NCBI GenBank assembly: GCA_024137785.1
Contig: JAHRHZ010000266.1
Span: 260,738-324,737, forward strand
Reading direction: 5' to 3'
Source: Ginglymostoma cirratum
Lineage: Eukaryota
DNA length: 64,000 nt
Both the position numbers and the translations under genes were made by a program. How positions within the stretch are numbered: the first letter of the stretch is position 1; each line of letters starts with the position of its first letter. The notes beneath the pieces were generated by a model. It made no database searches, had not been told where the DNA came from, and saw nothing but the letters and a program-made list of their open reading frames with translations. Shown in pieces: positions 12,720 through 57,259 of this stretch.

Positions 12720-13520
12720 AGGGGTACCCCATCAATTTTCATATCATCTGTGAGCTTATAGGTTATATTTGTTAAGCAAAAAGAACTGAGCTGACTTGTT
12801 TCTGATAACAAATTAAATACAGGGTCATTGAAAGGGGGAAATAATGTTTTAAAAGAAAGAAAATAACAGTTCAGGTTTAGCAAAGTGTGGAGCTGGAGGA
12901 ACACAGCAGGCCAGGCAAGGGTCCCAAACCAAAACGTCAGCCTTCCTGTTTCTCTGATGCTGCCTGGCCTGTTGTGTTCCTCCAGCTCCACACTTTGTCA
13001 TCTCTGACTTCAGCATCTACAGTTCTTGCTATCTCAGTTCAGGTTTATTGTATTCTAGAGTAAAACTACACTCAATAAAATATTACATTTCAAGGCATGC
13101 ATGTTTCCGCAGCAGAAGCGGATTAATTGACCACCAACAAATTGAAAACTCTGGCTAGGCAGTTGCAGATAAAATTCAGACCAAAAGCAAAGAAACAAGA
13201 AATTTTAAAACGAGTGGCCAACTATCTGGTATTAAATTGGGAGATGCAGATAAAGTGTAGAATTCTGGGCAAGGGTTCAATTAGACCAGAAGGACATGGA
13301 ATGAGAATTTCAAAGGAAAGAGAAAAACATTTCAAAAAGTAAAAGAGAAGACAGTTAGGAAGAAACAGAAAAAGTGAAAGAGGCAAGAGGGGAGAGATAT
13401 GGGAATTTTTAAAAGTTTGAACTTAGAGAGGAGGATCAACTGAAATCAGTGAAGGTGCTGACGGGAAAAGGTCTCCCTCAACCCAGGGCCAAATGAGGTG
13501 TTTTTCATATTATAAACATT
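12720..13520 (+). mobile_element. Possible Gypsy gag N-terminal remnant
   Basis: LKTLARQLQI...KKQEILKRVANYL followed by an E/K/R-rich stretch, resembling fish Gypsy gag starts. Confidence 0.35.
12880..13034 (+). mobile_element. PLE mini-hairpin with TSD
   Basis: Inverted arm caaagtgtggagctggaggaacacagcaggccaggc, then a forward unit plus tail. TSD cagttcaggttta at 12867-12879 and 13035-13047. Confidence 0.85.
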
Positions 13521-14233
13521 TACTGTGAAAATAGAAACTAGGAGCATGAGTACGTTATTCAGCCCTTTAATCCTGCTCCTGTTCGATACGATCATGACTG
13601 ATCCTCCATCTCAACACCATATTCTCACCTTCTACCCTTGACATTATCTACCTCCTTCTTAAATATATTTGGTGATTTGGTCTCCACAGCTTCTGTGGTA
13701 GAGAATTCTGCAGGTTAACCATCCTCTGTGTATAAAATTATTTCCATATCTCAGTACAAAAGGGCCTACCCCATATTCTGAGACTGTGACTTTCAGTATT
13801 CCTGATTCTTAGGTGTATTTTTCTGCTTTACACCTTTTCTTTCTCGTGTTAATTTCTACCTCTGTGGTCATCCAGTGATCTCTGAATTTGTTTGTCCTAC
13901 CTTTTGTATTAGAGGGAATACATCTCAACTGTACCTGAACGATCTGATCCTTGAAGGTGTCCCTTTGATCGATTACTGATCTTCCTGCCAACATTATTCC
14001 AATCAATCCTACTCAACTTTGATCTAGTCCCAATAAGGTATGGTCTCTGCCAATTGATTTTTCTTATTTTGGATTATTGCATGTCATTCTCTAAGATCAA
14101 CCTGAACCTTATGATATAATGATCACTATCTGCTAAATGTTCCCCTACTAACTTTTGTTAGGTGAAATTTGAAATGACATGTACTGTTCTGGTTGCTACA
14201 TTATCGAGTACAGAAACAGTTTACCAGGATGTT

Positions 14234-14465
14234 ACAAAAACAGAAGTCGCTGGAAAAGTTCAGCAGGTCTGGCAGCATCTGTGAAGAGAAATCAAAGTTA
14301 ATGTTTCAGGTTTGGTGACCCTTCCTCAGAATGGTTCTGAGGAAGGGTCACTTGACCCGAAACGTTAACTTTGATTTCTCTTCACAGATGTTGCCACACC
14401 TGTTGAGCTTTTCCAGCAACTTCTGTTTTTGTTTCTGATTTACAGCATCCACAGTTCTTTCGGTT
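14234..14465 (+). mobile_element. PLE mini-hairpin (family B) with TSD, inserted in CR1
   Basis: ~98-bp inverted arms meeting at cctcagaa-tgg-ttctgagg, plus a tail. TSD tttaccaggatgtt at 14220-14233 and 14466-14479. Confidence 0.9.
14334..14370 (+). ncRNA. Minimal type I hammerhead ribozyme motif
   Basis: CTGAGGA-a-GGGTC-actt-GACCC-GAAA-CG-TT-A. Confidence 0.7.
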
Positions 14466-14959
14466 TTTACCAGGATGTTGCCTGGTTTAGAGGGTATTAC
14501 CTATGAGGAGAGATTGGACAAACTTGACTTTATTTCACTTAAAAGTCAAAGGATGAGGGGTGAACTGATAGCAGTTCACAAAATTATGAGGCATGGATAG
14601 AATGGATAGTTGGAGTCTTTTTCCCAGGATAGAAAGGTCAATTACTAGGGGACATAGGTTTAAGGTAAAAGACACTAAGTTTAAAGAAGATATGAGAGGT
14701 AAGTGGTAAGTGCCCAGAATGCACTGCCAAAGGAGGTGGTGGAGGTAGATGCAATAGCAACGTTTGAGAGGAATCCTGACAGATATATGAATGGGCAGAG
14801 AATAGAGGAATATTGATCGCATACAGGCAAAAAATTTTTAGCTTAGGAAGGCAACATGTGGAAGCACAGTCTTGGAGGGTGAAAGGGCTTGTTCCTTTGC
14901 TGTATTGTTCTTTGTTCTTTGACAGTTCATCCACTTGGCCCACCTCATTTCTAAGGATC

Positions 14960-15300
14960 AGGTTTATTTTGACTTATTCTTCGGATGAAGGCATCACTGA
15001 CTATGCTGGCTTTTATTGCACATCCTTACTTGTCCAGAGAGCAGTTAAGAGTCAATCACCTTGTTATGGTTATGGAGTCACATGTAAAGGTAAGGTTGGC
15101 AGATTCCTTCCTTCAATGACATTAGTAAACCAAATGGGTTTTTTCAACAATCAGCAATAGATTCATGGTCATCATTAGATTCTTAATTCCAGATTGTTAT
15201 TGAATTCAAATTCGACTATTTGCCACGGCAGGATTTGAACCCAGGTCCGTTGGTTTCTGGATTAACAGTCCAGCGATAACAACACGAGGCCATTGCCTGC
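14960..15300 (-). mobile_element. SacSINE1/Deu-like SINE
   Basis: Reverse complement of the 8074-8413 family. Confidence 0.7.
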
Positions 15301-15329
15301 CTGGGTCCAACAGTGCATCCTTCTTTGTT

Positions 15330-17310
15330 GGACTGGACACACACTGTCATAGGAACCTCTCCTTAATACAGTCCTATAACACCTGCCCCTTGTTGCCCCT
15401 TACGCAACCAGTATCCCAGTCTGTATTTGGGTAAGTGAAGTCTCCTATCACAATTGCTCTATAATGTTGGCATTTGTCTGTAATTTCACTGCAGATTTGT
15501 TCATCTATATCCTTTTCACCAGAGGCATAGAGTCATAAGGCACAGAAACAGACTCGTCGGTCTAACTGGTCCATGCCAAACATAATCCCAAACTAAACTA
15601 GTCCCACCTGCCTGCTACTGGTCCATATCCCCCCAAACCTTTCATATTCATGTACTTATCCAACTATCTTTTCAACACTGTAACTGTGCCTGCATCCACC
15701 ACCGTCTGTGTAAAAAAAAACTGCCCCAAATCTTTTTAAAATTTTTCTCCTTTCACCTTAAAAATGCGTCCCCTTGTCTTAAAATCCCCAATCATAGGGA
15801 AAAGACACCTACCATTAACTTCATCTATGCCCCTCATGATTTTATAAACCTCTTATGCTTCCATGAAAAAAGTCACAGCTTATCCAGACTTTCCTATAAC
15901 TCAAACTGTCCATACCTAGCAATAAGCTGGTAAATCTTTACTGAACCCTGTCTGCATAATAATATCCTTCATAAACAGGGTGACTAGACTGGACACAGTA
16001 CTCCAGGAGAGGCCTCACCAATGTCCTGTACAACTTCAACATGACACCCAAAATTTTGTACTCAAGGACTGAGCAATGTAGTTTCTGTAATAGCTATGAT
16101 GTCCCAATCCCGTGTTCCTAAACATGCCCTGAGTTCATACCTATAAGACTTCTTGGATTGAAATCAATGCAGTTTAATTCTTCAGTATTATTACATTCTC
16201 TAACTTTCTCTTGTCTTTCTTTTCTCATCAATTTGCTCTTTCACATTCAGAACTTTCCTCATCAATCTTTCTATTTACACTGCTACTTAGAATTCCCCCA
16301 CTCCTCCATCTCTAGCAGTATAAGGTCTCCTTTAATGGAACTCACAATTCTCGCTGCTAAAGATATTGGTCCCTTTCCAGTTCAGGTTAAACTGCTTCTT
16401 TTTGAACAGGTATTTTCAGTTCCAGAACAGATTCCAGTTGTCTAAAAGCCTGAAACCCTGAAGATTACACCACCTTTTCAGCCATTGACTTATCTCCTTT
16501 ATCCTTTTGTTCCCTCCCTCATTCGAGTTTGGCATTAGGAGTAAACCAGAAATTGCTACTTTTAATGAGCATGGGGCTGGATGAACACAGCAGGCCAAGC
16601 AGCATCATAGGAGCAGNNNNNNNNNNNNNNNNNNNNNNNNNNNNNNNNNNNNNNNNNNNNNNNNNNNNNNNNNNNNNNNNNNNNNNNNNNNNNNNNNNNN
16701 NNNNNNNNNNNNNNNNNNNNNNNNNNNNNNNNNNNNNNNNNNNNNNNNNNNNNNNNNNNNNNNNNNNNNNNNNNNNNNNNNNNNNNNNNNNNNNNNNNNN
16801 NNNNNNNNNNNNNNNNNNNNNNNNNNNNNNNNNNNNNNNNNNNNNNNNNNNNNNNNNNNNNNNNNNNNNNNNNNNNNNNNNNNNNNNNNNNNNNNNNNNN
16901 NNNNNNNNNNNNNNNNNNNNNNNNNNNNNNNNNNNNNNNNNNNNNNNNNNNNNNNNNNNNNNNNNNNNNNNNNNNNNNNNNNNNNNNNNNNNNNNNNNNN
17001 NNNNNNNNNNNNNNNNCAGCATCTGCAGTACCTTTTATCTCTGATACATTGCTACTTTTAATGTTTCTTTTTAAACTCCTACCTAACCTCTTATATTCAC
17101 TCTGTAAAGTTTTAGTCTTCTCCCTTAAAATGTTATTCCTATCAATGTGTACAATAATTTCCGACTTCTCAATCTTCGATTTAACAATATGCTTGAAATG
17201 TTTTGAGACGTCCTTAAACTTAGTACCAGGAAAGCAACATGCCATCCTAAGTTTACGCTCACTGCTGCAGAATTTCCTGTCTGTGCCCCAAAGCTGCTTA
17301 TAGCAGTTAA
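15330..17310 (-). mobile_element. CR1 fragments (3' end, endonuclease, ORF1 SGNH-esterase part)
   Basis: ORF1-like CFPGTKFKDVS..IVHIDRNNI and ISGLL..WC..QGFRLLDNWNLFW; 3' end at 15525-16075. Confidence 0.7.
16568..17047 (+). mobile_element. Young PLE inverted element spanning an assembly gap
   Basis: Inverted arm before the N run and tail after it. TSD attgctacttttaatg at 16552-16567 and 17048-17063. Ends closely match the 51788-54471 subfamily. Confidence 0.8.
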
Positions 17311-17454
17311 AGGAGTCTGTAAGGACAAATCAGGTCTTACAACTTATGCTATGGATGTTATGGATAGAGGAGGGTTCGCACGTGTAAAACAGCATCATTA
17401 TCACCTCGGTCCTAAGAAACGGCCCACCTGAAAGAAGCAACCCATGTTGGAAAA

Positions 17455-17933
17455 GACCCAATGGAAGGAGTTCTTGTGGTGTAGTGGTAGTGTCCCTACC
17501 CCTAAGCTAGGAGTCCCAGCTTCAAGTCCCACCTGCTCCAGTCGTGTGTCATAACATCTCTGAACAGGTTGGTTAGAAAAATAGGTTAAATTTAAAAAAC
17601 GGAAATCGGTGGTGGTGGGCAAGGCCTCTTGTGGTATGGTGGTAGTTTCACTAGCCCTGGACTAGAGGGCCCAGGTTCAAGTCCCACCTGCTGCAGAGGT
17701 GTGTAATAACATCACCAAGGAAGTTGATTAGAGAAGTAGATTAAATAAGAAATCTGAGGTATTAAGGTAGAAAAGAATGAGTACCAAAACAAATCTGTCT
17801 TTTCCTTTACGTTCTTTTTGATTTGTTCATGGCATGTGAGCGACATTGGCTAGGCTAGTATTAAAGTAAAAGAACTAATGGAAAGAGCTCTTGTGATGCA
17901 GTGGGAGTATCCCAATCCCTAAACCAGGAGACC
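17455..17933 (+). repeat. Tandem array of short tRNA-like SINE units (left part)
   Basis: Units with tggtgtagtgg (A box), ggttcaagtcc (B box) and acctgctccag..ataacatctct; the third unit is cut at 17933. Confidence 0.7.
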
Positions 17934-25287: not shown

Positions 25288-25502
25288 GGTGTAGAGCTGG
25301 ATGAACACAGCAGGCCAAGCAGCATCACAGGAGCAGGAAAGCTGACGTTTCGGGCCTTGACCCTTCTTCATTTTTTCTGAAGAAGGGTCTAGGCCCGAAA
25401 CGTCAGTTTTCCTGCTCCTCTGATGCTGCTTGGCCTGCTGTGTTCATCCAGTTCTACACCTTATTATCTCAGATTCTCCCGCATCTGCAGTTCCTACTAT
25501 CT
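25288..25502 (+). mobile_element. PLE mini-hairpin (family A) in the Gypsy 5' LTR
   Basis: ~85-bp near-perfect inverted arms joined at cttcttca-tttttt-ctgaagaag, plus tail. TSD ctgaccttggtacaa at 25273-25287 and 25503-25517. Confidence 0.9.
25374..25407 (+). ncRNA. Minimal type I hammerhead ribozyme motif
   Basis: CTGAAGA-a-GGGT-ctag-GCCC-GAAA-CG-TC. Confidence 0.75.
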
Positions 25503-25518
25503 CTGACCTTGGTACAAT

Positions 25519-28745: not shown

Positions 28746-28789
28746 CCACCTTGTTGTGTGACATTATCACCATGCTAAACTGGAAAGGA

Positions 28790-29092
28790 GTTAGTTGACT
28801 TGCTCGCCCAGCTGGCTTGTTTTCGTTCAGACATTTCGTCACCATGCTAGGTAACATCATCAGTGAGGCCTACGATGAAGCGATCGTGTTCTACTCCGCT
28901 TGGAATTTATACTGTCTGGTCTGTTATGGTGAGTAGTGTCATTTCTGGTTTTGATCTGTATGGGTTTGTATATGGGGTCCAATTCTATATATTTGTTGAT
29001 TGCATTGCGCGTTGAGAATGAAAACAAGCCAGCTTGACAAGCAAGTCAACAACCTCACCCACAACCCAAGCTCCAAATCTTTGCTAAAACTT
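28790..29092 (-). mobile_element. Poseidon-type PLE 3' fragment with inverted end and tail
   Basis: The minus frame reads FSTRNAINKYIELDPIYKP. Inverted gttgacttgct..ctggcttgttttc / gaaaacaagccag..gcaagtcaac. TSD taaactggaa at 28776-28785 and 29093-29102. Confidence 0.75.
28828..28866 (-). ncRNA. Hammerhead ribozyme motif (distinct family, longer stem II)
   Basis: Minus strand CTGATGA-t-GTTACC-tagcat-GGTGAC-GAAA-TG-TC. Confidence 0.7.
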
Positions 29093-29547
29093 TAAACTGG
29101 AATAGACTTTGAGCAGATCCAGCAACTCAAGACTGGGCATCCCTGCAACAATATGGGTCATTAGCAGCACCAGAATCATAATCCAACACAATCTGCAACA
29201 TCATGGCTTGGCGTATTCCCCTCTCTACCTATGCCATCAAGCCAAGGGAGAAACCATGGATCAGTGAAGATTTCAGGAGAGCATGCCAGGAGCAGCACCA
29301 GGAATAAATAAAAATGAGTTGTCAGTGTGGTGAAGTTACAACACGGAGATACTTGTGTGTCAAACAGGAGAGGCAGCCAGTGATATACAGAACTAAACAA
29401 TTCCAGAACCAATGAATCAGATCTAAGCTTTGTGGTCCATAAGGGGAGGCTCCATAAACATCCCCGCCATCAATGATGGGGGAGCCAAGCACATCAGTGC
29501 AAAAGATAAGGCTGAAGCATTTTCAATAAACTTCAACTGAAAGTGCC

Positions 29548-30420
29548 ATAAGACTATAAGGCTAGAAGTAAGCCATTCAGCCCATTTAATGAAATCATAG
29601 CTGCGCTGATAACTGTCAAATCCACTTTCCTGCTTTTTTCCCCATAATCTTCAATTCCCTTACTGATTAAAAATCAGCCTATGTCTCTACATTCTATCAC
29701 GGAATGGTCACTGTTTCCTCGGGCATAGCTTACTCCGACATCATTTATTCTACCCGCCTCATCAGATATTGCTTGATCCAAAATTGTCTAATTCCCGAAC
29801 AAAAACAAAGTTGCTGGAAAAGCAACCTAAGGGTCATCGGACCCGAAACGTTAACTCTGTTTTTTCCTTCACAGATGCTGCCAGACCTGCTGAACTTTTC
29901 CAGCAACTTTGTTTTTGTTCCTGATTTACAGCATCCGCAGTTCTTTCGTTTTTTTATTTTGCCTAATTCCTGGTTGGATCCATTATATATTGTTCCAAAA
30001 AATTGTCCCAAATGTATTTGATGAATTTTTCCATGTGGCTACCTCTGCCAATCTGTCTGTATGAAGATTAACGTCACACTTGATTAATACACTGCCTTTT
30101 ATCTAAACACCACTATTGTCATGTCCTGATTTATTCTCTGTTCTGCCATTAAGCTATTGTCGGTAGGCCTACAAACTACTAGTCCTACTAGTGTCTTCAT
30201 TTCCTTTTTATGTCATGCCTCCACCTATATGGATTCTACATCTTCTGATCCAAGATCATTTCTTGCTATCATACTAATTCCATCCCACACTAACAGTGCT
30301 CCCCACCACCATTTCCTTCCTGTCTGTCCTTTCAAAATGTCACATGTTCCTAAATATTGAGTTTCCAGCTTTGATCTCTTTGTAACCATATCTCCATAAT
30401 AGTTATACGATCACATCATT
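29548..30420 (-). mobile_element. CR1 fragments
   Basis: 3' UTR with taagac repeats and endonuclease-region remnants. Confidence 0.55.
29797..29958 (+). mobile_element. PLE mini-element (family B) with a short inverted arm
   Basis: Arm gaacaaaaacaaagttgctggaaaag; the unit starts inside the hammerhead (gggtc-atcg-gaccc-gaaacgtta). TSD ttgYctaattcc at 29784-29795 and 29959-29970. Confidence 0.85.
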
Positions 30421-32360: not shown

Positions 32361-32492
32361 TTTTTCTGATGAAGGGTTTAGGCCCGAAACGTCAAGTTTT
32401 CCTGCTCCTATGATGCTGTTTGACCTGCTGTGTTCATCCAGCCCCATGCTTGTTATCTCGGATTCTCCAGCATCTGCAGTACCTTTTATCTC
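32361..32492 (+). mobile_element. 132-bp solo PLE 3' unit starting at the hammerhead
   Basis: Perfect TSD tagccatgggaaat at 32347-32360 and 32493-32506; near-identical to the reverse complement of 51786-51916. Confidence 0.92.
32363..32396 (+). ncRNA. Minimal type I hammerhead ribozyme motif, intact core
   Basis: ttt-CTGATGA-a-GGGT-ttag-GCCC-GAAA-CG-TC-aag; predicted cleavage after C32393. Confidence 0.8.
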
Positions 32493-32722
32493 TAGCCATG
32501 GGAAATGCAGGGTTACAGAGATAGGTTGAGGGATTGGAACTGGGTGGGCTGCTCTTTAGATGGTTGGTGTGGACTCACTAGACCAAATAGCCTGCTTCCA
32601 CTGTGTAGGGATTTTATCAGGACCATGAAACATCAGGCCATTTTTCTGCACATTTATCACTGACCTCACCCCTTCTAATCTCCTTAAGCTCATGGCCTCT
32701 AACCTCATTAGAATGCAAGAAT

Positions 32723-38300: not shown

Positions 38301-38302
38301 GT

Positions 38303-39946
38303 CCAGTGACCCTTCCTCAGAACTGATAGTAGCTAGGAAAATGTTGGTTTATACGCAGAAGATAGGGTGGGTGGAGAGGGTAAGGAGTAAACAATAGGTG
38401 GGGATACAGCAGATAACAATCCAACTAATAGGCTGAATAGCTAAAAATGGGGATTGTTAGTGCCTTACAATGGGTTGTGTGTAATAGCAGACTATGTGCT
38501 ATGCCTTCAGCGGTGCAGGGTGAGGTGTCTTGGAGCTGTGGAGGGTTGTTAGGAGTGAAGGAAGAGTGGACCAAGGTGTCCCAGAGGGAACGGTCCCTGC
38601 AGAAGGTGAACAAGGGAGGGCAATCATGTCTGGTGGTGGCATCTTGTTGGAGGTGATGGAAATTGCAGCTAAAGGTCCTCTGGATGTGAATGCTGGTCTG
38701 ATGGAAGGTAAGGTCAAGGGGAACCCTATTGCTGTTGCCAGAGGGAAGAGAGGGGGTAAGGGCCAAAGTGCGGGATATGGGTCGGACCCAGCTGAAGCAC
38801 CTGTCAACGTTGGTTGAAATTAGTATCATTGAAACATATGCGATGAAGACGGAGGAACTAGGAAATGCAATAGTGTCTTTACAGGAGGCAGCATGTGAGG
38901 ATGTATAGTCCAGGTAACTGTAGGAGTTGGTGGGTTTATAATGGATATGGGTGGCCAGTCTATCCCCAGAAATGGAAACAGAGATGTCAAGGAAGGGAAG
39001 GAAGGAGTCAGAGATGGACCAGGTGAAAATGAGGGCAGGGTGGAACTTGGAACCAAAATCGATTACCATAGAAGGTGTAACTCCTGTCCATTTACCTCCT
39101 CCCTCCTCAATATCCAAGTGTCCAACTATACCTTCCAGGTGAATTAGCCTTCACACAATCTAGCCTACTGCATTCACTGCTCACAATGTGGTCACTTCTA
39201 TCTTGAGGCAACAAAATGTAGTCTGGGTGACCACTTCGCAGAACACCTACTATCTGCCTGTAAAAAAGGCCCTGAGCTTCCAGTTGTCTGCCACTTCAAC
39301 ACACCACTCTGTTCCCTGGCCAATATATCTGTCTCAGGATTGCTGCAGTACTCCAGCAAAGCTCAGCATAAGCTGGAAAAACAACACCTCATTTCTGCTT
39401 GGGGACCTAGCAGCCCTCTGGACACAATATTGAGTTCAATAACTTTAGGGCTTGAACTCTCCCATCTCCTCGCCCCTAACCCCACGCAGCAGGCCTTGTT
39501 ATCACATAGTGCGCTATTACACACAACCCATTGTTGGCTACTGGCAATCCCCATTAGTAGTTATTCAGACAGGAGGCTGGAAGAACATAGCAAGCCAGGC
39601 AGCATTTGGAGGAAAGGAGTAGTCAACATTTCGGGTATTACCCTTCTTCAGGATTGTAGTTAGTAGTAGCTATTGGTAGCTTTTAGTAGCTATTCAGCTT
39701 CCTAACCAGATCGTTATCCACTCCTTTATCTGTCCAACTGTTCTTCCCTGTCTTTGGGCTCTATCCCCATCTATCATCTACTCCTTAGCCCCTCCCTCAA
39801 CCCTGTACCCACATAAAATCCAATATCTTCCTAGCTACCATCAGTTTTGAGGAAGGTTCACTGGACCTGAAATGTTAATTCTGATTTCTCCTCACAGATG
39901 CTGCCAGACCTGCTGAGCTTTTCCAGCAATTTCTTTTGTTGTTTCT
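38303..39946. mobile_element. Rearranged PLE with inverted ends (RT/thumb on minus, GIY-YIG on plus)
   Basis: FHPALIFTWSIS..LPFLDISV..IHYKPTNSYSYLDY on minus; GIY-YIG-like segment 39110-39450 on plus. pLTR/hammerhead remnants at both ends and an extra unit at 39569-39653. Confidence 0.75.
39621..39653 (-). ncRNA. Hammerhead ribozyme motif (CpG-decayed stem III)
   Basis: Minus strand CTGAAGA-a-GGGT-aat-ACCC-GAAA-TG-TT. Confidence 0.55.
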
Positions 39947-41585: not shown

Positions 41586-41677
41586 TAACACAGTGTGGAG
41601 CTGGAGGAACACAGAAGGCCAGGCAGCATCAGAGGTGCAAGAAAGTTGACGTTTCGGGTTGGGACCCTTCTTCAGAA
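41586..41677 (-). mobile_element. 92-bp tail-less PLE unit starting at the hammerhead
   Basis: TSD aaagattactga at 41574-41585 and 41678-41689. Confidence 0.85.
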
Positions 41678-41678
41678 A
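41645..41678 (-). ncRNA. Minimal type I hammerhead ribozyme motif
   Basis: Minus strand ttt-CTGAAGA-a-GGGT-ccca-ACCC-GAAA-CG-TC-aa. Confidence 0.75.
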
Positions 41679-41723
41679 AAGATTACTGAACTGTCTTTCC
41701 AGATTTTCTCCTCTGTACAGCGC

Positions 41724-41724
<1 letters not shown>

Positions 41725-41758
<34 letters not shown>

Positions 41759-41761
41759 TGT
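41725..41761. repeat. (TG)n microsatellite
   Basis: About 15 uninterrupted TG units. Confidence 0.95.
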
Positions 41762-42455
41762 ACAAAATATTATACCTTAGGCCTCCCAATAGCCAGCAGG
41801 AGATAGAGGAACAGATATATAAGCATATCAGGGAATGATGCAAAAATAATAGAATTGTTGTAGTGGGTGATTTTAACTTCCCCAACTTTGACTAGGACTC
41901 CCTTAGTGCCCAGGGCTTAGATGGGACAGAATGTGTTAGCTGCCTCCAGGAGGGATTGTTGAAACAATATATAGATTGCCCAACTAGGGAAGAGGCTGTA
42001 CTCGACCTTGTATTGGGGTATGAGCTTGGCTAGGTGATTGAAATTTCAGTGGTGTGCATTTTGGAAACAGTGATCATAATTCAGTTAAATTTTAAGATAA
42101 TTATGGATAAGGATAAGATTAGTCCTCAGGTGAAAGTACTAAATTAGGAGAAGGCTAATTATAATGCAAGGAGTAAGGAACTGGAGAAATTAGATTGGAG
42201 AGTGGCTGTTTGAGGGTAAATGCATTCCTACATGGTGGGAGTCTTTTAAAGACCAGTTGATCAGAATTAAGGACCAGCATGTTCCTGTGAGGATAAAAGG
42301 TAAAGATGGGCAGACTCAGAAACCCTGGACGCCAAGGGAAACTGAAAGTTTAGTTGAAAATAAAAAGGAAGTATTTGTTAAATTCAGAAAATTAACATCA
42401 GATAACGCCATTGATGAATATAAGAGAAGCAGAAAAGAACATAAACAAATATTAG

Positions 42456-42657
42456 CTATAACACAGTCTAAAGCTGGAATAACACAGAAAGGCAGGCAGC
42501 ATTGGAGGAGCAGGAAAGTTGACGTTTCGGGTCGGAAGAAGGGTCCTGACCCGAAACATCAACTTTTCTGCTCCTCTGACGCTGCCTGGCCTGCTTGTGT
42601 ACTTCCAGCTCCATACTGAGCTATCTCTGATTCCATCATCAGCAGTTCTTGCTATCA
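42456..42657 (+). mobile_element. PLE mini-hairpin (family A, older)
   Basis: Inverted arms meeting inside the hammerhead, plus tail. Imperfect TSD ataaacaa..attag at 42441-42455 and 42658-42672. Confidence 0.8.
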
Positions 42658-43580
42658 ATAAACAAGAATTAGGAGGGCTAGAAGGGGCCATAAAATGCCC
42701 TCGGGAAGAAGGATTAAGAAAAATTCCAAGGCATTTTATACATTTTTTAGGGAGATGCTAAGATTCCTAAAATACGTATAAAATGCCTTAGGATTTTTCT
42801 TAATCCTTCTTGCCAAGGACATTTTGTGGCTCCAGAAGATTCTAAGGCATTTTATATGTATTTTAGGAGAAAAAGGGTAACTATAAAAAGGGTAGGCCCA
42901 CTCAAGGACTAAGGAGGAAATTTATTTTTGGAGCCAGAGGAATTGGGTAAGGTCTTTCATGAGTACTTTGCATCCAGTATTTACAAAGGAGAAAGACATG
43001 GATGATGTAAGATTTGGTAGGGACATATTGGTATTTTAGGGCATGTCGATATTAAGACGTAGACGTGTTTGGTGTCTTGAAAAATATTAAAATAGATAAG
43101 ACCCCAAGGTCTGATGGGAGCTATCCAGAGGTACTGAAGTAAGTGAGGGAGGAGATTGCTGGGGCCTTGACAGAGGTCTTTGTATTCAATTTAGCCATAG
43201 GCAAGGTCCCATAAGATTGGAGAATAGCCGACATTGCTTTTTTGTTTAAGAAGGATAATCCTGGAAATTGTAGGTTAGTGAGACTTACATCGGTCAAAGG
43301 AGGATTATTGGAGAACATTCTTAGGGACAGGATATATTTGCATTTGGAAAAGAGTGGGCTTATTAGGGATAGTCAGCATGGCTTTATGCAGGGCATAACT
43401 TGTCTAACAAAATTAATTGAGACTTTTGACAGTGACAAAGATGATTGATGAGACAGTGGATGTTGTCTAAAGCATTTGACAGGGTTCTTTATGGTAGCCT
43501 GGTCCAGAAGATTAAATCACAGGAATCTATGGTAAGTCGGCAAATCGCTGGGTCATAGGAAACAGAGGGTAATTGTGGAG

Positions 43581-43665
43581 ATAACAAGGTGCAGAGCTGG
43601 ATGAACACAGCAAGCCAAGCAGCATCAGAGCAACAGGAAGGCTGACATTTTGGGCCTAGATCCTT
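43581..43665 (-). mobile_element. Tail-less PLE unit inserted in CR1
   Basis: ataacaaggtgcagagctggatgaacacagc...gggcctagatcctt; the host frame resumes after it. Confidence 0.75.
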
Positions 43666-44401
43666 GAGGGGTGTTTTTGTTTGACTGGAAGTCTGTGACC
43701 AGTGGTGTTTCGCAAGGATCAGTGCTGGGATCTCTGTTGTTTGTAACATACATCTATTTAAATGATGAAAATGTAGATGGTCCAAATTGTAAGTTTGTAG
43801 GTGACACAAAAATTGGTGGAGTTGTTGCTAATGAGGAAGGTTATCAAAGGATGCAGCAGGATATAGATCAGTTGGAAAGTTGGGCAGAGAGATTGCATAT
43901 GGAGTTAATGTGGACAAGTGTGAGGTGATGCATTTTGGGAGGTCAAATGCAAAAGGATACAGTTAATGGCAGGACCCTTAGGAACACTGAGACAGATCTT
44001 GGGATCTAAGTCCACAGCTCCCTGAAAGTGACAACACAAGTGAATATGGTAGTAAAGAATGCGTACAGCATACTTACCTTCATTGGTTGGGGCATCGAAT
44101 ATAAAAGTTGGCAAGTCAAGTTGCAGCTGTACAGCACAATAGTTTGGCCACATTTGGAGTATTGTTTGTGGTTCTGGTTGCCACACTATAAGAAGGTTGT
44201 GAAGGCTTTGGAGAGGTTGCAAATGAGGTTTACCAGGATGTTGCCTAGATTGGGGTATTTGAGCTATAAAGAGAGTTTGGTTCGACCACATGTGGAATAC
44301 TGCGTACAGTTCTGATTGCCACATTACCAAAAGGATGTGGATGCTGTGGAGAGGGTGCACCAGGATGTTGCCTGGTCTGGAGGGTGCTAGCTATGAAGAG
44401 A

Positions 44402-46660: not shown

Positions 46661-46661
46661 G

Positions 46662-47586
46662 GAATCCCCCTTGTCCTCACATATCACCCCATCAACATCC
46701 GTATCCAATATATCATTCTTCGTCACTTCCGCCACCTACCATCCGACCCCACAACCAAAGAAATATTTCCCTCCCCACCCCTGTCTGCCTTTAGTAGGGA
46801 CCACATTCTCTGTGACTCCCTCATTTACTCCACACTCCCCACTAACCCCACACCCCCCAGCACCTTTCCCTGCAACCACAGTAAGTGCTACACCTGCCCC
46901 TACACCTCCCCCCTCACCTCCATTCAAGGCACCAAACAAACCTTCCACATTAGACAGAGGTTCACCTGCACATCTGTCAATGTGGTCTATTGCATCCGTT
47001 GCTCCTGACGTGGCCTCCTCTACATCAGTGAGACCAAGCGGAGGTTCAGAGACCATTTTGTAGAGCACCTGCGCTTTGTTTGCAACAAACGACAATACCT
47101 TCCGGTCGCAAGCCATTTTAACTCCCCCTCCCACTCCCGGAGTGACATGTCCATCCCAGGCCTCCTCCATTGTCACAATGATGCCACCTGCAAACTGGAG
47201 GAGCAGCACCTCATATTCCGCCTTGGGAGCCTACAGCAGAATGGCCTAAACATGGATTTCACCAGTTTTAAAATCTCCCCACCCAGGCCTCATCCCATGA
47301 CTAAGTCTCCCTCTCATCCCTGTCTCCTTGACCTGACACAACCTGTCCACCTTCTCTCCCACCTTTCCGCCACTCCCACCTCACTGACCAATCCCACCAC
47401 TCCCAACTTGCACTCACCTATCACCATCCCACCTACCTTCCCCAACCCCACCCCTCCTCTCTCTATTTATTTCTCAGCACCCTTGCCTCTCTCCATTTCT
47501 GAAGAAGGGTCCCGGCACAAAACGTCAACTTTCCTGCTCCTCCGATGCTGTCTGGCTGAGTTCCTTCAGCTCGACATTGTGTTATA
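46662..47586 (+). mobile_element. 5'-truncated PLE (GIY-YIG to pLTR), same family as 52581-54471
   Basis: CNHSKCYTCP, VVYCIRCS..GLLYISETKR, LEEQHLIFRLGSLQ; decayed hammerhead at ~47496-47529. Confidence 0.85.
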
Positions 47587-51000: not shown

Positions 51001-51882
51001 AAAATTGTACCCTTAATCTGTAATGGTTCTCAGTTATATGTATTCTCAGTCTGGCCGAGTCCTTGCGCCAAATTAAGGATTGGAGTCCAGAGCGAATCTT
51101 GTCAAAGACTGGCTCTGCACTGGTATCGACCTCCTTTAAAACTGATCAGTTGTGATTCAGATGTTGCTAAGCAACTTAACTGTTCCAAACCATGTGTAGG
51201 TAGACTTTTCAGGGTTTGCACTCTCCTGGATACTGGTCCATGAGTTCTCTTATTCAAGTCAAGCCTCGTAGGACTCCTTTGCTGTCTCAAGTCCACATAC
51301 TGGCAGCAACTACAATGGCTTGCCAGGCCAGATCCTGAAGACCACTTTAGCCATTTGACCGAGGCTCAGCTTTGTTTTGGGGTTTTACTATGGGCTGATC
51401 TAAGGTCTCTCTGCTCAGGATACGTCCTGTGTGACGCTCTGCGATTGCCCACACTCATGCGGTGTTCCCGAAGCTCAGCTGGACAGGTGAAGGTGTCCAC
51501 TTCCACTGGCATATCCTGTAGCTCACACGCTCCACTTGCCACATTTTCTAATGACGAACCCAGCTGTAGTGCTTGTTTGAAGTCCAGTTGGGCTTCAGTT
51601 AGTAGGTGCTTTTGCATGGTTATGTCATTAATCTCACATACCAAACAATCTGTCAGAATCTCATTCAGGGTTAACCCAAAAATCACACACCTCTGCCAGT
51701 CATCTTAACCTCGTCAAAAATACCAATACAGATTAGAGATAGTAGGAACTGCAGATGCTGGAGAATCTGAGATAACAAGATGGACAGAGATAAAAGGTAC
51801 TGCAGATGCTGGAGAATCCGAGATAACAAGCATGGGGCTGGATGAACACAGCAGATCAAGCAGCATCATAGGAGCAGGAAAA

Positions 51883-51916
51883 CTTGACGTTTCGGGCCTA
51901 AACCCTTCATCAGAAA
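51883..51916 (-). ncRNA. Minimal type I hammerhead ribozyme motif in the left pLTR
   Basis: Reverse complement identical to 54381-54414. Confidence 0.8.
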
Positions 51917-52580
51917 TGGGGGAGGGGAAGAGGGTTCTGAAATAAATAGGGAGAGAGGGGGAGGCGGACAGAGGATGGATAGAGGAGAGGATAGGTGGAG
52001 AGGAGGCAGACAAGTCGAAGAGGCGGGGATGGAGCCAGTAAAGGTGAGTGTAGGTAGGGGGGTAGTGAAGGGGATAGGTCAGTCCAGGGAGGACGGACAG
52101 GTCAAGGGGGCGGGATGATGTTAGTAGATAGGAGATGGGGGTGTGGCTTGAGGTGAGAGGAAAAACAGGTGAGGGAGGTGNNNNNNNNNNNNNNNNNNNN
52201 NNNNNNNNNNNNNNNNNNNNNNNNNNNNNNNNNNNNNNNNNNNNNNNNNNNNNNNNNNNNNNNNNNNNNNNNNNNNNNNNNNNNNNNNNNNNNNNNNNNN
52301 NNNNNNNNNNNNNNNNNNNNNNNNNNNNNNNNNNNNNNNNNNNNNNNNNNNNNNNNNNNNNNNNNNNNNNNNNNNNNNNNNNNNNNNNNNNNNNNNNNNN
52401 NNNNNNNNNNNNNNNNNNNNNNNNNNNNNNNNNNNNNNNNNNNNNNNNNNNNNNNNNNNNNNNNNNNNNNNNNNNNNNNNNNNNNNNNNNNNNNNNNNNN
52501 NNNNNNNNNNNNNNNNNNNNNNNNNNNNNNNNNNNNNNNNNNNNNNNNNNNNNNNNNNNNNNNNNNNNNNNNNNNNNNNN

Positions 52581-54431
52581 GAACTCATCTCCACCTACCT
52601 AGACTCCATTTTCACCCCCTTGGTCCAGGAACTCCCTACCTCCGTCCGTGACACCACCCACGCCCTCCACCTTCTCCAGAACTTCCAATTCCCCGGTCCC
52701 CAACACCTCATTTTCACTATGGACGTCCAGTCCGTATACACCTGTATTCCCCATGCTGATGGCCTAAAGGCCCTCTGCTTCTTCCTGTCCCGCAGAACGG
52801 ACCAATCCCCCTCCACCGACACCCTCATCCGCTTAGCCGAACTCGTCCTCACCCTCAACAACTTTTCTTTCAATTCCTCCCACTTCCTACAGACAAAGAG
52901 GGTGGCCATGGGTACCCGCATGGGCCCAAGCTATGCCTGCCTCTTTGTAGGTTACGTGGAACAATCCCTCTTCCGTACCTACACTGGCCCTAAACCCCAC
53001 CTCTTCCTCCGTTACATTGATGACTGCATCGGCGCCGCCTCGTGCTCCCACGAGGAGCTCGAACAGTTCATCCACTTCACCAACACCTTCCACCCCAACC
53101 TGAAGTTCACCTGGACCATCTCCAACACTTCTCTCTCCTTCCTGGACCTATCTGTCTCCATCTCGGGCAACCACCGAGAAACAGATGTCCATTTCAAGCC
53201 CACTGACTCCCACAGCAACCTGGAATACACCTCCTCCCACCCACCCTCCTGCAAAAATGCCATCCCCTATTCCCAATTCCTTCGCCTCCGCCGCATCTGC
53301 TCCCAGGATTAGACATTCCACTCCCGTACATCTCAAATGTCCTCATTCTTCAAGGACCGCAACTTCCCCCCTACAGTGGTCGAGAACGCCCTCGACCGTG
53401 TCTCCCGCATTTCCCGGAACACATCCCTCACGCCCCGTCCCCGCAATAATAACCAAAAAAGAATCCCCCTCGTCCTCACATACCACCCCACCAACCTCCG
53501 GATCCAACGCATCATCCTCCGACACTTCCGCCATCTGCAATCAGACCCCACCACCAAAGACATTTTTCCCTCCCCACCCTTATCTGCCTTCCGGAGGGAC
53601 CACTCCCTCCGCGACTCCCTTGTCCGCTCCGCACTCCCCTCCAGCCCCACCACACCCGGCACTTTTCCTTGTAACCGCAGGAAGTGCTACACCTGCCCCC
53701 ACACCTCCTCCCTCACCCCAATCCCAGGCCCCAAGAAGACTTTCCACATCAGGCAGATGTTCACCTGCACATCTGCCAATGTGGTATACTGCATCCGCTG
53801 TACCTGTTGTGGCTTCCTCTACATCGGGGAAACCAAGCGGAGTATTGGGGACTGCTTTGCAGAACACCTGCGCCCAGTTCGCAACAAACAACTGCACCTC
53901 CCAGTCGCGAACCATTTCAACTCCCCCTCCCATTCCTCAGACGACATGTCCATCCTGGGCCTCCTGCAACGCCACAGTGATGCCACCCGAAGGCTGCAGG
54001 AACAGCAAATCATATTCAGCCTGGGAACCCTGCAGCCCAATGGCATCAATGTGGATTTCACAAGCTTCAAAATCTCCCCTCCCCCAACCGCATCCCAAAA
54101 CCAGCCCAGCTCATCTCCACCTCCCTCACCTGTTTTTCCTCTCACCTCAAGCCACACCCCCATCTCCTATCTACTCACATCATCCCGCCCCCTTGACCTG
54201 TCCGTCCTCCCTGGACTGACCTATCTCCTCCCTACCCCCCTACCTACACTCACCTTTACTGGCTCCATCCCCGCCTCTTCGACTTGTCTGCCTCCTCTCC
54301 ACCTGTCCTCTCCTCTATCCATCCTCTGTCCGCCTCCCCCTCTCTCCCTATTTATTTCAGAACCCTCTTCCCCTCCCCCATTTCTGATGAAGGGTTTAGG
54401 CCCGAAACGTCAAGTTTTCCTGCTCCTTTGA
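52581..54431 (+). pseudogene. PLE polyprotein: reverse transcriptase + GIY-YIG endonuclease, one nonsense codon, 5' end in the gap
   Basis: MDVQSVYT, AMGTRMGPSYA, RYIDD, FLDL, KPTD; CNRRKCYTC linker; VVYCIRCTCCGFLYIGETKR..EH. ORFs 52620..53312 and 53337..54431 are the same frame, separated by TAG at 53310-53312. Confidence 0.9.
54381..54414 (+). ncRNA. Minimal type I hammerhead ribozyme motif in the right pLTR
   Basis: ttt-CTGATGA-a-GGGT-ttag-GCCC-GAAA-CG-TC-aag; predicted cleavage after C54411. Confidence 0.8.
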
Positions 54432-57259
54432 TGCTGCTTGACCTGCTGTGTTCATCCAGCCCCATGCTTGTTAACAAGATGTACAGCTGGATGAACACAG
54501 CAGGCCAAGAGCATCAGAGGAGCAGGAAAGCTCTTCAGAAAATGAAGAAGGGTCTGGACCCAAAACATCAGCTTTCCTGCTCCTCTGATGCTGCTTGGCC
54601 TGCTGTGTTCATCCAGCTCTGCACCTTGTTACCTCTACCAATACAGATTCCCCGGCTCCGAACTGTCAAATAAAACCGATAATATCTCAGAATTAGAGGA
54701 GGCTGGGATCGTAATATTCCGTAACTAAATCCATCAAATCTTGAAAGATTTTGGTATCTGGTGTCTTGGATGAAAAGGTCCTAATAACCGTTGCTTTTCA
54801 TGTATCCCCAATGTCATTTGCCCAGAAAAATTAACACATTCTTTCCATACACTGGGCCCAGTCTCCGATGGCATGATCAAACAAGTCAAGTTTCCCAAAT
54901 AAAGGCATGATGCCAGAAATGCTTACCCCAACTCAAAGACGACTGTTGCAAGCAAATTTTCTTCGGGAGCGTACTGTTTTCTCTCGTTGGCACTTAAATA
55001 GCTCCAAGGAGGCCGATATCCTGTCATCAAGTCTCGCTTTATTTACATATGCTCGGTACATGGGCTCTGACCAGCTGGCGCAGAGCAAGTCCCTACAGTG
55101 ACGAAAATTCCCAAGACTCCTATTTTTATGTGTCAGTCAGGGTTCCCTGATTGGCCCAGGTTAACAGCCTCAGTAAGGGAACTCATATTCAATGAGATCT
55201 ACCTGGCCAACCTCATTCCAATCACTACAGATACACTTCATGGTCAGCAGCCTCACACAACCCACATTCGTGGATGTTGGCCTCTAACATGTGCCAGCCT
55301 CTCTGCACCTTCATGGCATATCTCAGAACCATTTGGATTGCACCGGCACTATTGGAATGTTACTGCGAGGGCTCTACATACACAAGGACAGCTCACAGAT
55401 TAGACAAAGCAGTAACTCAGGGCCGCTTGCTCACCAACTTTGTGCCTACCTGGATACCTTGCATTTTATGCTTTGCCATCTCAGCCACACCATAAAGGCT
55501 CACAGTACTTCTATCTTGTCTTGCAGTCTAGAGCAGGAAAAAGGCCAAGCAGTTGGCCATGCTAGTCAGCAGTCAGTCAAACAGGGTGCACATATTACTG
55601 TACAGCACAGCATTATACCACGCATCCAGCTGCACCATGTGCCAGCAACATATACAAGAAACACATTACAAATAAAGCAAGCAAATGTCATGTTTCAAAG
55701 TCTAAGGGGAGTAGTCCTCAGGTAGGTCCAGGGAAACACCCTTCAGTCAGGAGGTCTGTGTACATTAAGTCATGGGCAGCCTCTCAATGGGATAAGCCAC
55801 AGTCAATCATGAGGCTCTGTACACTAAAAGTCAAGGGTAATGATTATCAGGGACTACTTCTTGGAAAGATAGCTGGGGGACAGCCATGGTATCACCATAG
55901 GCTAAGTTAACCAAGTCTGAAAGGATATTGCTACGAGACTGGGCCCGTGGCAAGTGGCAAGGGAACCAAGAGAGAGAAAGACATTTAACCTCACCAAACT
56001 AACTGTCACACACATGCACTTATTGTTTGCATAGGTAGACGCTGTCATGGAGGCAAGGTCCCATCTTCACATGGAAGGTATCCTCTATCATTTTGTATGA
56101 CATCATCACCATGTAGATTTTGAACAGATGTAGCAACACTAACCTGGGCATTCAAGAGATGCTGAAGCAATCAGAGGCAGAATTGTATTAAACCTTATGG
56201 CCCAGACTACTGGGGAGGTGATGGTGTAGTGATATTTTGGCTGGGCTAGTAATCTAGAGACCCCAGTAATGTTTTGGGATGACTGATGGTGAAATTTGAA
56301 TTCGTTAGAAATCTGGAATGAAAAAAACCTAACAATGATCATGGAATTGATTGTCAATTGTCAGAAAAATCGATCAAGTTTACAAATGTCCTTCAAGGAA
56401 GAAAATCTGCCATTCTCACCTGGTCTGGCCTACCTGTGACTTCAGACCTTTAGCAATATTGTGGACTCTGAACTGCCATCTGATATACCCTACAAAGCCA
56501 TGCAGTTGTATCAACCTGGATGAAATTCTCCAAAATGAATGAAACTGGACCAATCTCCTGGCATTGACTTCAGTACCAAAAACAACAATGACAAACACAG
56601 TCCTGTGGATCCTGCAAAGTGATCCTTACTAACGTCTGAGACTCAAAAACTACTCGAGGAGCAGCTCAGAAAAGTAATTACACACACAACATCCCAGACA
56701 ACACCAACACCATCCAAGGTATCTGCTGTCCCACCACAGGTGACACCTAGCAAAGGTGACAGCACAGCAGTATGGTCAGGAGGGAATTATGCTGACAGTT
56801 CTTAAATTACTTCTGGACCCCATGAGGTTTCATGGCATCAGGTCAAACATGGGCAAGGAAACCTCATGCTGACTAACATGTAACCCAACACACCTCCCCA
56901 GTAAATGTTCAGCACCAAGTGTGGCTCGGCAGCATCACTATTGAGCAAACTGGTCAAATCATAAAGGACATTGCTGCCAGACTGGGTATGTAGCAGGTGG
57001 TGAGGGAACCCACAAGTGGAAAAAAAAACTTAACCTCATCCTCACCAATCTGCCTCAGTTTGATTTATCCTGGGAATGAAAACTAGCCTAAATAGAGGTG
57101 AGGTGTGTAAGGGGACAGTAGTCGTTCTGGCATCATGAATAGCAGCCCATGGACATTGGCCAAGAGGATTTAGACAGGCGATTGACACAGTATTCATGTC
57201 CAGTCCCCGAAATAAGATATATTAACAGAGACAGGTGGGACAGAGAGAGAGACAGACAG

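What the first reader, a model, noticed from the sequence alone, without database searches (positions are those of the whole stretch)
12867..54649. Family of tiny hammerhead-bearing Penelope derivatives inserted as hairpins or solo units with 10-16 bp TSDs
Seen: at least 10 insertions of ~90-300 bp (12880, 14234, 16568 across a gap, 25288, 28790, 29797, 32361, 41586, 42456, 51735/54472). Each has its own TSD and consists almost entirely of the PLE 3' terminus with a complete or truncated CUGANGA-stem II-GAAACGUH motif; most are head-to-head inverted pairs. At least three sequence families share this layout. Established: PLE pLTRs carry minimal type I hammerheads whose palindromic ACGU stem III is thought to need dimerisation. 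Inference: these are either stereotyped abortive PLE insertions or an independently amplifying non-autonomous, retrozyme/MITE-like class, here at roughly one per 5 kb.
Basis: partly seen in the sequence, partly recalled or inferred. Interest (0 to 1): 0.8.

Follow-up and report, generated by a model that had tools for sequence, protein, structure and literature searches.

The report
Mini Penelope retrotransposon insertions with hammerheads
This shark DNA holds about nineteen insertions of Penelope-like retrotransposons, most only 90-300 bases long, often as inverted pairs, some still with a minimal hammerhead ribozyme motif; the pattern is real, but it matches how these elements are already known to insert.

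Summary
All ten listed insertions exist. Eleven insertions have target-site duplications of 8-16 bp. Nine minimal hammerhead cores are present against 0.29 expected by chance, and 11 tail motifs against 0.37. I count about 19 Penelope-like (PLE) insertions in 64 kb. Four or five are long copies with reverse-transcriptase and GIY-YIG remnants.

The short units are the 3' end of such a PLE. The solo unit at 32361 is 98.5% identical to the end of the coding copy at 51786-54471.

Published work already covers every structural feature:
- heavy 5' truncation;
- an adjacent inverted 5'-truncated copy;
- a 30-40 bp tail at one end only;
- assembly breaks at these structures;
- two adjacent reverse-transcription start sites, with both DNA strands cut and extended;
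- thousands of mostly solitary minimal hammerheads, some paired on opposite strands.

Every hairpin junction in the window is different, and there are no tandem arrays. They are therefore best read as stereotyped by-products of PLE integration, not self-propagating hairpins. SINE-like spread of solo units is not excluded.

Two regularities deserve a look. Short arms start at the 5' edge of the hammerhead. All nine inverted pairs carry exactly one tail.

The scan has reported this same class many times elsewhere in this genome. No ribozyme activity or RNA evidence could be obtained.

The parts
12880..13036 (+). Family D inverted pair. Left arm 12880-12917 is inverted and tail-less. Right arm 12918-13036 has a truncated, mutated hammerhead and the tail. 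TSD CAGTTCAGGTTTA.
14234..14470 (+). Family C inverted pair. Arms are 98 nt and 90% complementary, with a 3-nt centre 2 nt upstream of CTGAGGA. Complete core at 14337-14366 (+) and a decayed one at 14300-14329 (-). Tail on the right arm only. TSD TTTACCAGGATGTT.
16569..17046 (+). Family A inverted pair broken by assembly gap 16617-17016. Left side 16569-16616 is an inverted tail-less arm. Right side 17017-17046 is a tail end. 16-bp TSD ATTGCTACTTTTAATG.
25288..25503 (+). Family B inverted pair with arms 95% alike. Complete core at 25377-25404. The centre lies at the 5' edge of the hammerhead. Tail on the right arm only. TSD CTGACCTTGGTACAA.
28787..29095 (-). Family E. The minus-strand copy carries about 140 nt of upstream sequence and the core CTGATGATGTTACCTAGCATGGTGACGAAATGTC (28830-28863), and is tail-less. 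The short plus-strand arm starts just after the cut site and has a 37-nt tail. TSD TAAACTGGAA.
29796..29962 (+). Family C. A 27-nt inverted internal piece is followed by a forward arm that lacks CTGANGA and has the tail. TSD CTAATTCC, 8 bp.
32361..32492 (+). Family A solo unit of 132 nt: complete core 32366-32393, body and tail. TSD TAGCCATGGGAAAT. It is inserted into another high-copy repeat; other copies of that repeat lack the inserted 145-155 nt.
38301..39946 (.). Long family C inverted pair with RT and EN remnants on both arms. The centre is near 39085. The outer ends are decayed and no TSD was found.
39572..39655 (-). Solo tail-less unit nested in the previous element. Core CTGAAGAAGGGTAATACCCGAAATGTT.
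41588..41678 (-). Family D solo unit of 91 nt. Complete core at 41648-41675. Tail-less, ending at ...cacactgtgtta. TSD AAAGATTACTGA.
42449..42657 (+). Old family D inverted pair with arms 79% alike. The left arm ends inside stem II. The right arm starts at GAAGAAGGG and has the tail. TSD ATAAACAA, 8 bp.
43572..43668 (-). Family B solo unit with a decayed core, ending at ...ttatctc without a tail. No clear TSD.
46664..47585 (+). Long D-like PLE fragment: EN remnant 72% identical to the A copy, C-rich 3'UTR, decayed core. It ends at the internal boundary without a tail.
51735..51785 (-). Tail and outer end of a family B inverted pair. The A element inserted into this pair and split it. The rest of the pair is at 54472-54636. 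TSD of the whole structure is TACCAATACAGATT.
51786..54471 (.). Family A PLE inverted pair.
- The minus arm 51786-52180 has the tail, a complete core (51886-51913) and the 3'UTR.
- Gap 52181-52580 follows.
- The plus arm 52581-54471 has the RT (RVT_1), one in-frame stop at 53310-53312, the GIY-YIG EN, the 3'UTR and a complete core at 54384-54411. It is tail-less.
- Its own TSD is TAACAAGATG.
54472..54636 (.). Remainder of the split family B inverted pair. The left arm has the hammerhead core deleted. The right arm has a decayed core and ends at ...ttacctc without a tail.
58240..58445 (+). Family C fragment with 3'UTR, a decayed and deleted core, and the tail.
60501..62242 (-). Long PLE copy of family F with RT and EN remnants, a decayed core, and the tail at 60501.
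2411..2489 (-). Old C-like terminal fragment with a tail motif.
4877..4946 (-). Old C-like terminal fragment.

Best explanation
These are integration products of endonuclease-bearing Penelope-like elements (PLEs), from at least five sequence families, in a shark genome.

**The unit.** It is the PLE 3' terminus: a minimal type I hammerhead of about 32 nt with no helix III, a conserved body of about 60 nt, and an optional tail of 35-45 nt.

**Shown here:**
- the unit is identical in sequence to the end of an RT + GIY-YIG copy;
- TSDs are 8-16 bp;
- the 3' ends fall in two classes, with tail and without;
- each inverted pair has exactly one tailed arm;
- the fold-back junctions are all different.

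**From published work:**
- PLE protein cuts and extends both DNA strands.
- It starts reverse transcription at two adjacent internal RNA sites, and the spacing between them is the tail.
- PLE insertions are typically 5'-truncated, with an adjacent inverted truncated copy.

**My inference:**
1. Each hairpin arises in one event. The two staggered nicks prime on one RNA, one at each of the two start sites, which gives exactly one tail per pair.
2. Both cDNAs run towards the RNA 5' end.
3. One strand then jumps onto the other cDNA, leaving a few filler bases at the centre.
4. Solo units come from priming on one strand only.
5. The frequent 5' end just upstream of CUGANGA marks the 5' end of a short template RNA, for example a transcript starting in the pseudo-LTR and primed at the start sites nearest its 5' end.
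6. The copies are mostly dead on arrival. The hammerhead is carried along and is not needed for insertion.
For: **PLE identity**
- RVT_1 at E 1e-5, with GIY-YIG at E 0.007 in the same frame downstream.
- The motif VVYCIRCTCCGFLYIGETKR is present.
- Three further coding remnants are in the window.

**Same terminus in short and long copies**
- The solo unit at 32361 is 98.5% identical to 51787-51916 and 97.8% to 54381-54473.
- The 3'UTR of the two A arms is 98% alike over 267 nt.

**Insertions**
- 11 TSDs against a background of 0.2% for 10 nt or more.
- In contigs from four studies, other copies of the host repeat skip 145-155 nt at 32339-32349 -> 32493-32499.

**Two classes of 3' end**
- Tail motif: 11 hits against 0.37 expected.
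- Tail-less ends are seen at 41588, 43578, 47585, 54471 and 54636, and on every inverted arm.
- Genome-wide, contigs read ...TCTACACCTTGTTATCTC and then continue into unrelated AT-rich letters (loose ends behind 32442).
- 9 of 9 inverted pairs have exactly one tail. If each arm had an independent 50% chance of a tail, the probability would be 0.002.

**Junctions and arrays**
- Junctions differ at every locus.
- There are no tandem arrays of units.

**Literature**
- PMC8557442: 5' truncation, inverted 5'-truncated copy, tail at one end only, assembly problems.
- PMC11167929: two RT start sites define the tail; both strands are cut and extended; hammerhead mutants still insert.
Against: - The 5' ends of short arms cluster within -5..+3 of CUGANGA in 9 of 13 readable arms. 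Simple random 5' truncation does not predict this. It would also fit a dedicated short template.
- The dual-priming and template-jump step is my inference. No intermediate was observed.
- Arm-to-arm identity is only marginally above identity to other family members in 5 of 7 pairs and below it in 2. A single-event origin of each pair is therefore not proven by sequence.
- Families B and E have no long coding copy in this window.
- Rfam models do not recognise the motif, and no cleavage or RNA data exist for this species.
Confidence: 0.72

Rival explanations
1. Solo units running from the hammerhead to the tail form a SINE-like non-autonomous family. They carry the reverse-transcriptase recognition and start sites, are transcribed on their own or by read-through, and are copied in trans by PLE protein. 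On this reading their number reflects their own amplification.
For: - The 5' end at the hammerhead edge is stereotyped in four families.
- The unit spans the conserved blocks GATGCTGCC, CCTGCTG, TTCCAGC and CAGCATCYRCAGT, which are shared by diverged families.
- In vitro, the Anolis PLE needs only a short RNA around this region (PMC11167929).
- 8,500-12,500 distinct contigs per run match the unit.
- A 2026 preprint argues that vertebrate retrozymes, including monomers, are non-autonomous PLE derivatives (10.64898/2026.07.22.740005).
Against: - The A solo unit is 98.5% identical to the coding PLE's terminus, with only private differences.
- About half of the loose-end consensus in front of the unit genome-wide is PLE 3'UTR-like.
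- No promoter has been shown inside 130 nt.
- No RNA run was available.
- A short template cut from the PLE's own transcript explains the same facts.
Confidence: 0.2
2. The hairpins are themselves the mobile unit, a MITE- or retrozyme-like fold-back element that copies itself as an inverted pair.
For: Seven or eight of the ten listed insertions are inverted pairs, with TSDs outside both arms.
Against: - Centre position, filler bases and arm lengths differ at every locus: 14234 is symmetric, 12880 joins +53 to +9, 29797 has a 27-nt arm, 42458 ends inside stem II, and 54472 has a deleted core.
- The arms are always asymmetric, with one tail.
- Long coding PLEs have the same architecture (38301-39946, 51786-54471).
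- None of the 15 best-supported joints changed strand.
- A hairpin transcript would pair its sense hammerhead with the antisense copy.
Confidence: 0.04
3. The inverted arm comes from snap-back. The first-strand cDNA folds on itself at the RNA 5' end and copies itself backwards, and the hairpin is then replicated into an inverted repeat.
For: - The centres at 14234 (3-nt loop) and 25290 (7-nt spacer) are nearly perfect palindromes.
- Both arms share the same 5' end.
Against: - This does not explain why the returning strand always stops 35-45 nt short, at the same internal boundary that solo tail-less copies use as their 3' end (41588, 43578, 47585; loose ends).
- It does not explain asymmetric junctions such as 12880 and 29797.
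Confidence: 0.04

Closest known systems
Endonuclease-bearing Penelope-like elements (Penelope/Poseidon, Neptune) and their insertion signature, as described in Craig et al. 2021 (PMC8557442) and Frangieh et al. 2024 (PMC11167929)
   Same: - RT followed by a C-terminal GIY-YIG EN.
- A hammerhead in the terminal repeat region.
- Heavy 5' truncation and an adjacent inverted 5'-truncated copy.
- A 30-40 bp tail at one end only.
- Two alternative 3' ends.
- TSDs and assembly breaks.
   Different: - Here most copies are extremely short (90-300 bp).
- Their 5' ends pile up at the hammerhead's 5' edge.
- No partial-tandem (pLTR-ORF-pLTR) copy is present in this window.
- The PLE clade was not assigned.
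Minimal hammerheads (min-HHR) of metazoan PLEs, Cervera and de la Pena 2014 (PMC4209133)
   Same: - The core is CUGANGA, a long stem II, then GAAA, with no helix III (ACGU).
[quoted passage not shown]
- Helix I is short, at 3-4 bp.
- The motifs are mostly solitary, and some occur as pairs on opposite strands.
   Different: - Shark families were not in that survey.
- Activity is untested here.
- One family has GAAAUGUC and family C cuts after GUU.
Animal non-LTR retrozymes, Cervera and de la Pena 2020 (PMC7229834); Li et al. 2026 preprint
   Same: They are short, non-coding, carry a type I hammerhead, and are PLE-related.
   Different: Retrozymes are head-to-tail tandem arrays that give circular RNAs. 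In this window there are no tandem arrays, only solo units and inverted pairs, and the units do not begin at the cleavage site.
5'-inverted LINE-1 insertions formed by twin priming
   Same: Two strands prime in one insertion event, giving an inverted segment inside a single pair of TSDs.
   Different: In L1 the inverted piece comes from a part of the RNA further 5' than the direct piece. Here both arms cover the same region, and each starts at a defined internal start site.

Membership tests
Penelope-like element (EN+) | Reverse transcriptase domain | tested here: met
   RVT_1 at E 1.1e-5 and 25.7 bits, below Pfam's 29.6 cut-off, on a copy truncated by the gap. tblastn finds three more copies in the window.
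Penelope-like element (EN+) | C-terminal GIY-YIG endonuclease in the same reading frame | tested here: met
   GIY-YIG at E 0.0071 and 17.1 bits, sub-threshold. The motif ..VVYCIRCTCCGFLYIGETKRSIGDCFAEH.. lies downstream of the RT in the same frame. One in-frame stop at 53310-53312.
Penelope-like element (EN+) | Insertion signature: 5' truncation, inverted 5'-truncated partner, and a 30-40 bp tail at one end | tested here: met
   Nine inverted pairs, each with exactly one tail of 35-45 nt.
Penelope-like element (EN+) | Partial tandem organisation (pseudo-LTRs) | tested here: not met
   No head-to-tail PLE copy in this window. This concerns full-length copies and is not required of fragments.
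Penelope-like element (EN+) | RT clusters with the PLE/telomerase clade in a phylogeny | not tested
   No large protein search or tree was run. PDB sequence searches gave nothing useful.
Minimal hammerhead of PLEs (min-HHR) | Conserved core C3 U4 G5 A6 N7 G8 A9 ... G12 A13 A14 A15.1, then U16.1 H17 | tested here: met
   Nine matches to CTGANGA-N6-30-GAAAYRTH against 0.29 expected. Six of them have GAAACG.
Minimal hammerhead of PLEs (min-HHR) | A stem II that can pair, with changes between families that keep the pairing | tested here: met
   The stem reads GGGU..GCCC in A and B, GGGUCA/UGACCC in C, GGGUC/GACCC and GGGU/ACCC in D, and GUUACC/GGUGAC in E. RNAalifold keeps the stem.
Minimal hammerhead of PLEs (min-HHR) | Self-cleavage, as a dimer or with protein help | not testable with these tools
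   No RNA runs exist for the species. Rfam hammerhead models give no hit. MFE folding is uninformative.
Non-LTR retrozyme | Head-to-tail tandem repeats, each with a hammerhead | tested here: not met
   TRF finds no such array. The only period-51 hit is two adjacent tails produced by a nested insertion.
Non-LTR retrozyme | Circular or unit-length RNAs with ends at the cleavage site | not testable with these tools
   Only DNA contigs were available.
MITE / fold-back DNA transposon | Fixed terminal inverted repeats and a fixed internal structure repeated at many loci | tested here: not met
   Arms are asymmetric and the junctions are unique at each locus.

The most novel reading that the evidence does not exclude
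The 95-132 nt module from hammerhead to tail is the complete cis-acting template of shark PLEs, and it spreads as a SINE-like parasite of the PLE machinery. The strict rule of one tail per inverted pair would then record a mechanism not yet described: one RNA with two adjacent start sites is used once by each of the two nicked DNA strands, followed by a template jump.
Probability: 0.2. Interest if true: 0.55.

Novelty: new member of a known kind. Interest (0 to 1): 0.25.

Why it matters
PLE integration is still poorly understood. A genome with very many young mini-insertions records its outcomes naturally. The fixed pair of 3' ends, the rule of one tail per inverted pair and the 5' pile-up at the hammerhead edge could be counted genome-wide. 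That count would test the two-start-site, two-strand model proposed from in vitro work on an Anolis element.

In practice these inverted pairs cause assembly gaps (two lie in this window) and produce spurious microRNA-precursor hits. Transcribed hairpins could also yield double-stranded RNA against PLEs. That last point is speculation.

As a discovery the class is already described, so the value is confirmatory.

Tried and rejected
- **Rfam**, at gathering score and at E<=10: no hammerhead family matched. The sub-threshold microRNA hits simply reflect the long inverted repeats.
- **MFE and cofold of the cores**: stem II forms, but the catalytic fold cannot be judged this way.
- **RNAalifold on nine units**: it pairs GAUGCUG with CAGCAUC in the tail, but the pairs are nearly invariant. 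There is therefore no covariation support, and a 7-mer complement is expected about 0.5 times by chance in 130 nt.
- **Arm-to-arm versus between-copy identity**: too few and too short to prove single-event origin.
- **Sequencing runs**: only low-coverage DNA kept as contigs, with no RNA. Cleavage-site ends, circular junctions and copy-number steps could not be measured.
- **Laid contigs**: they confirm boundaries and abundance only. I laid them on the solo unit, which lacks the 3'UTR, so the ratio of mini to long copies was not obtained.
- **PDB sequence searches** and **the protein atlas**: nothing usable.
- **A conserved ORF start in the unit:** rejected. The frame differs between families A and B, and family C has a stop.
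Full report
**What is there**

The window is shark DNA, according to earlier notes of this scan. Reading the ten listed sites confirms short insertions that share one module:

- a hammerhead-like core, CTGANGA-A-stem II-GAAACGTY;
- a body of about 60 nt with conserved blocks GATGCTGCC, CCTGCTG and TTCCAGC;
- an optional tail of 35-45 nt containing CAGCATCYRCAGT (alignment).

Counts against chance:

| Feature | Found | Expected by chance |
|---|---|---|
| Strict core | 6 | 0.07 |
| Relaxed core | 9 | 0.29 |
| Tail motif | 11 | 0.37 |

Eleven insertions have exact TSDs of 8-16 bp, median 13 and 67% A+T. In random window pairs a match of 10 nt or more occurs in 0.2% of trials.

I count about 19 PLE-derived insertions in 64 kb.

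Rfam reports no hammerhead at any threshold. This is expected for a motif without helix III, but it means that the ribozyme is recognised by motif only.

**The gaps**

- *Gap 16617-16 to 17016.* It sits inside one insertion. The same 16-bp TSD flanks an inverted tail-less arm on the left and a tail end on the right.
- *Gap 52181-52580.* It sits between two oppositely oriented arms of one PLE. Reading frame across it is not an issue, and its true length is unknown.
- Published work notes that such inverted PLE structures break assemblies (PMC8557442).
- I left both gaps as they are.

**Source of the units**

- *The coding copy.* At 52620-54110 on the plus strand there is a reverse transcriptase (RVT_1, E 1e-5). 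In the same frame lies a GIY-YIG nuclease (E 0.007; motif seen). One stop interrupts the frame at 53310-53312.
- *What follows it.* A C-rich 3'UTR comes next, then the hammerhead at 54384, then the body.
- *Its inverted partner.* The partner at 51786-52180 is 98% identical over the UTR and carries the tail.
- *Identity to the solo unit.* The solo unit at 32361 is 98.5% identical to this terminus.
- *Other coding remnants.* Three more lie at 38557-39405 (itself an inverted pair), 46664-47284 and 60803-62242. Each is joined to a unit of a different family.
- *Nesting.* The A element is nested inside a family B inverted pair, with its own TSD TAACAAGATG. This explains the apparent 51-bp tandem found by TRF.

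The units are therefore the 3' termini of PLEs.

**Regularities**

1. *Two 3' ends.*
   - Copies end either after the tail or at an internal boundary near the first TTATCTC.
   - Both ends finish in the same short motif.
   - Contigs from four studies show the tail-less end genome-wide, followed by unrelated AT-rich sequence.
2. *One tail per pair.*
   - All nine inverted pairs have the tail on exactly one arm.
   - If each arm had an independent 50% chance of a tail, the probability would be 0.002.
3. *A preferred 5' end.*
   - Nine of 13 readable short arms start within -5..+3 of the C of CTGANGA.
   - That is not the ribozyme's cut site.
   - Long copies read straight through into the UTR at this point.
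4. *Unique junctions.*
   - 14234 is symmetric with a 3-nt centre.
   - 25290 has a 7-nt spacer.
   - 12880 joins +53 to +9.
   - 29797 has only a 27-nt inverted piece.
   - 42458 ends inside stem II.
   - 54472 has its core deleted.
   - 28787 has one arm with 140 nt of upstream sequence.
5. *No tandem arrays*.

**Comparison with the literature**

- *Craig et al. 2021 (PMC8557442).* PLE insertions are highly 5'-truncated and often have an inverted 5'-truncated copy next to them. A 30-40 bp tail is often present at one end only.
- *Frangieh et al. 2024 (PMC11167929), on a purified Anolis PLE protein.*
  - The protein cuts and extends both DNA strands.
  - It starts reverse transcription at two adjacent internal RNA sites, and the interval between them is the tail.
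  - It needs only a short RNA around this region.
  - It inserts equally well with hammerhead mutants.
  - The authors found no RNA-seq reads ending at the cut site.
- *Cervera and de la Pena 2014 (PMC4209133).*
  - They found thousands of minimal hammerheads per animal genome, mostly solitary and probably from truncated PLEs.
  - Some were pairs 100-700 bp apart on opposite strands.
  - Activity was weak and dimer-dependent.
- *A 2026 preprint.* It links vertebrate retrozymes, including one chondrichthyan, to PLE termini.

Every element of the finding is thus a known property of PLEs.

**Mechanism**

I conclude, with confidence about 0.7, that these are by-products of PLE integration.

My own inference goes one step further:

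1. Each inverted pair forms in one event.
2. The two staggered nicks prime on one RNA, one at each of the two start sites.
3. Both cDNAs run to the RNA's 5' end.
4. A template jump joins them.

This accounts for four observations: the rule of one tail per pair, the shared 5' end of symmetric pairs, the filler bases, and the TSD outside both arms.

The 5' pile-up suggests a short template whose 5' end lies just upstream of the hammerhead. One candidate is a transcript that starts in the terminal repeat and is primed at the start sites nearest its 5' end. This is untested.

**What remains open**

- Solo units contain all the conserved blocks and may be copied in trans, which would make them SINE-like. 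I give this 0.2.
- Self-propagating hairpins are contradicted by the unique junctions.
- A hairpin transcript pairs a sense hammerhead with an antisense one, so it cannot provide the sense-sense dimer.
- No RNA data were available. Ribozyme activity, transcription starts and circular RNAs are therefore untested.

**Verdict**

The element is a new member of a known kind, of low to moderate interest.

The scan has already reported the same class repeatedly on other pieces of this genome. Earlier follow-ups there reached the same conclusion.

The alignment tool's automatic majority line for the 130-nt non-coding termini was not used.

Noticed in passing
window 32200-32360 and 32493-32600: The solo A unit sits inside another very high-copy shark repeat (..gtgcaggttaagtgaattagccatgggaaat | gcagggttacagagatagg..). 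Contigs from four studies hold many copies of this repeat that lack the insertion.
   Followed up: partly
window 42684-42868: An AT-rich fold-back repeat lies directly after the family D pair. Arms are 68 nt at 87% and 33 nt at 91% complementary. It has no hammerhead or tail motif. It gives the best sub-threshold Rfam microRNA-precursor hits and may be a MITE.
   Followed up: no
window 53337-54431: The reading frame of the A-family PLE stays open for about 110 codons beyond the GIY-YIG domain. It runs through the C-rich '3'UTR' and the hammerhead and stops at 54429-54431. This may only reflect the C-rich composition.
   Followed up: no
window 32412-32418 with 32468-32474, and the same columns in families B, C, D and F: GATGCTG, about 20 nt after the cut site, and CAGCATC in the tail are complementary and invariant across diverged families. 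RNAalifold pairs them, enclosing the internal 3' boundary, but there is no covariation.
   Followed up: partly
window 41725-41761: A (TG)18 microsatellite lies 46 nt from the solo unit at 41588. Some PLE clades are reported to favour microsatellites.
   Followed up: no
window 51773-51785 and 54472-54482: One PLE has inserted into the body-tail boundary of another PLE unit (TSD TAACAAGATG). This fits the published report that PLE protein nicks its own terminal region.
   Followed up: partly
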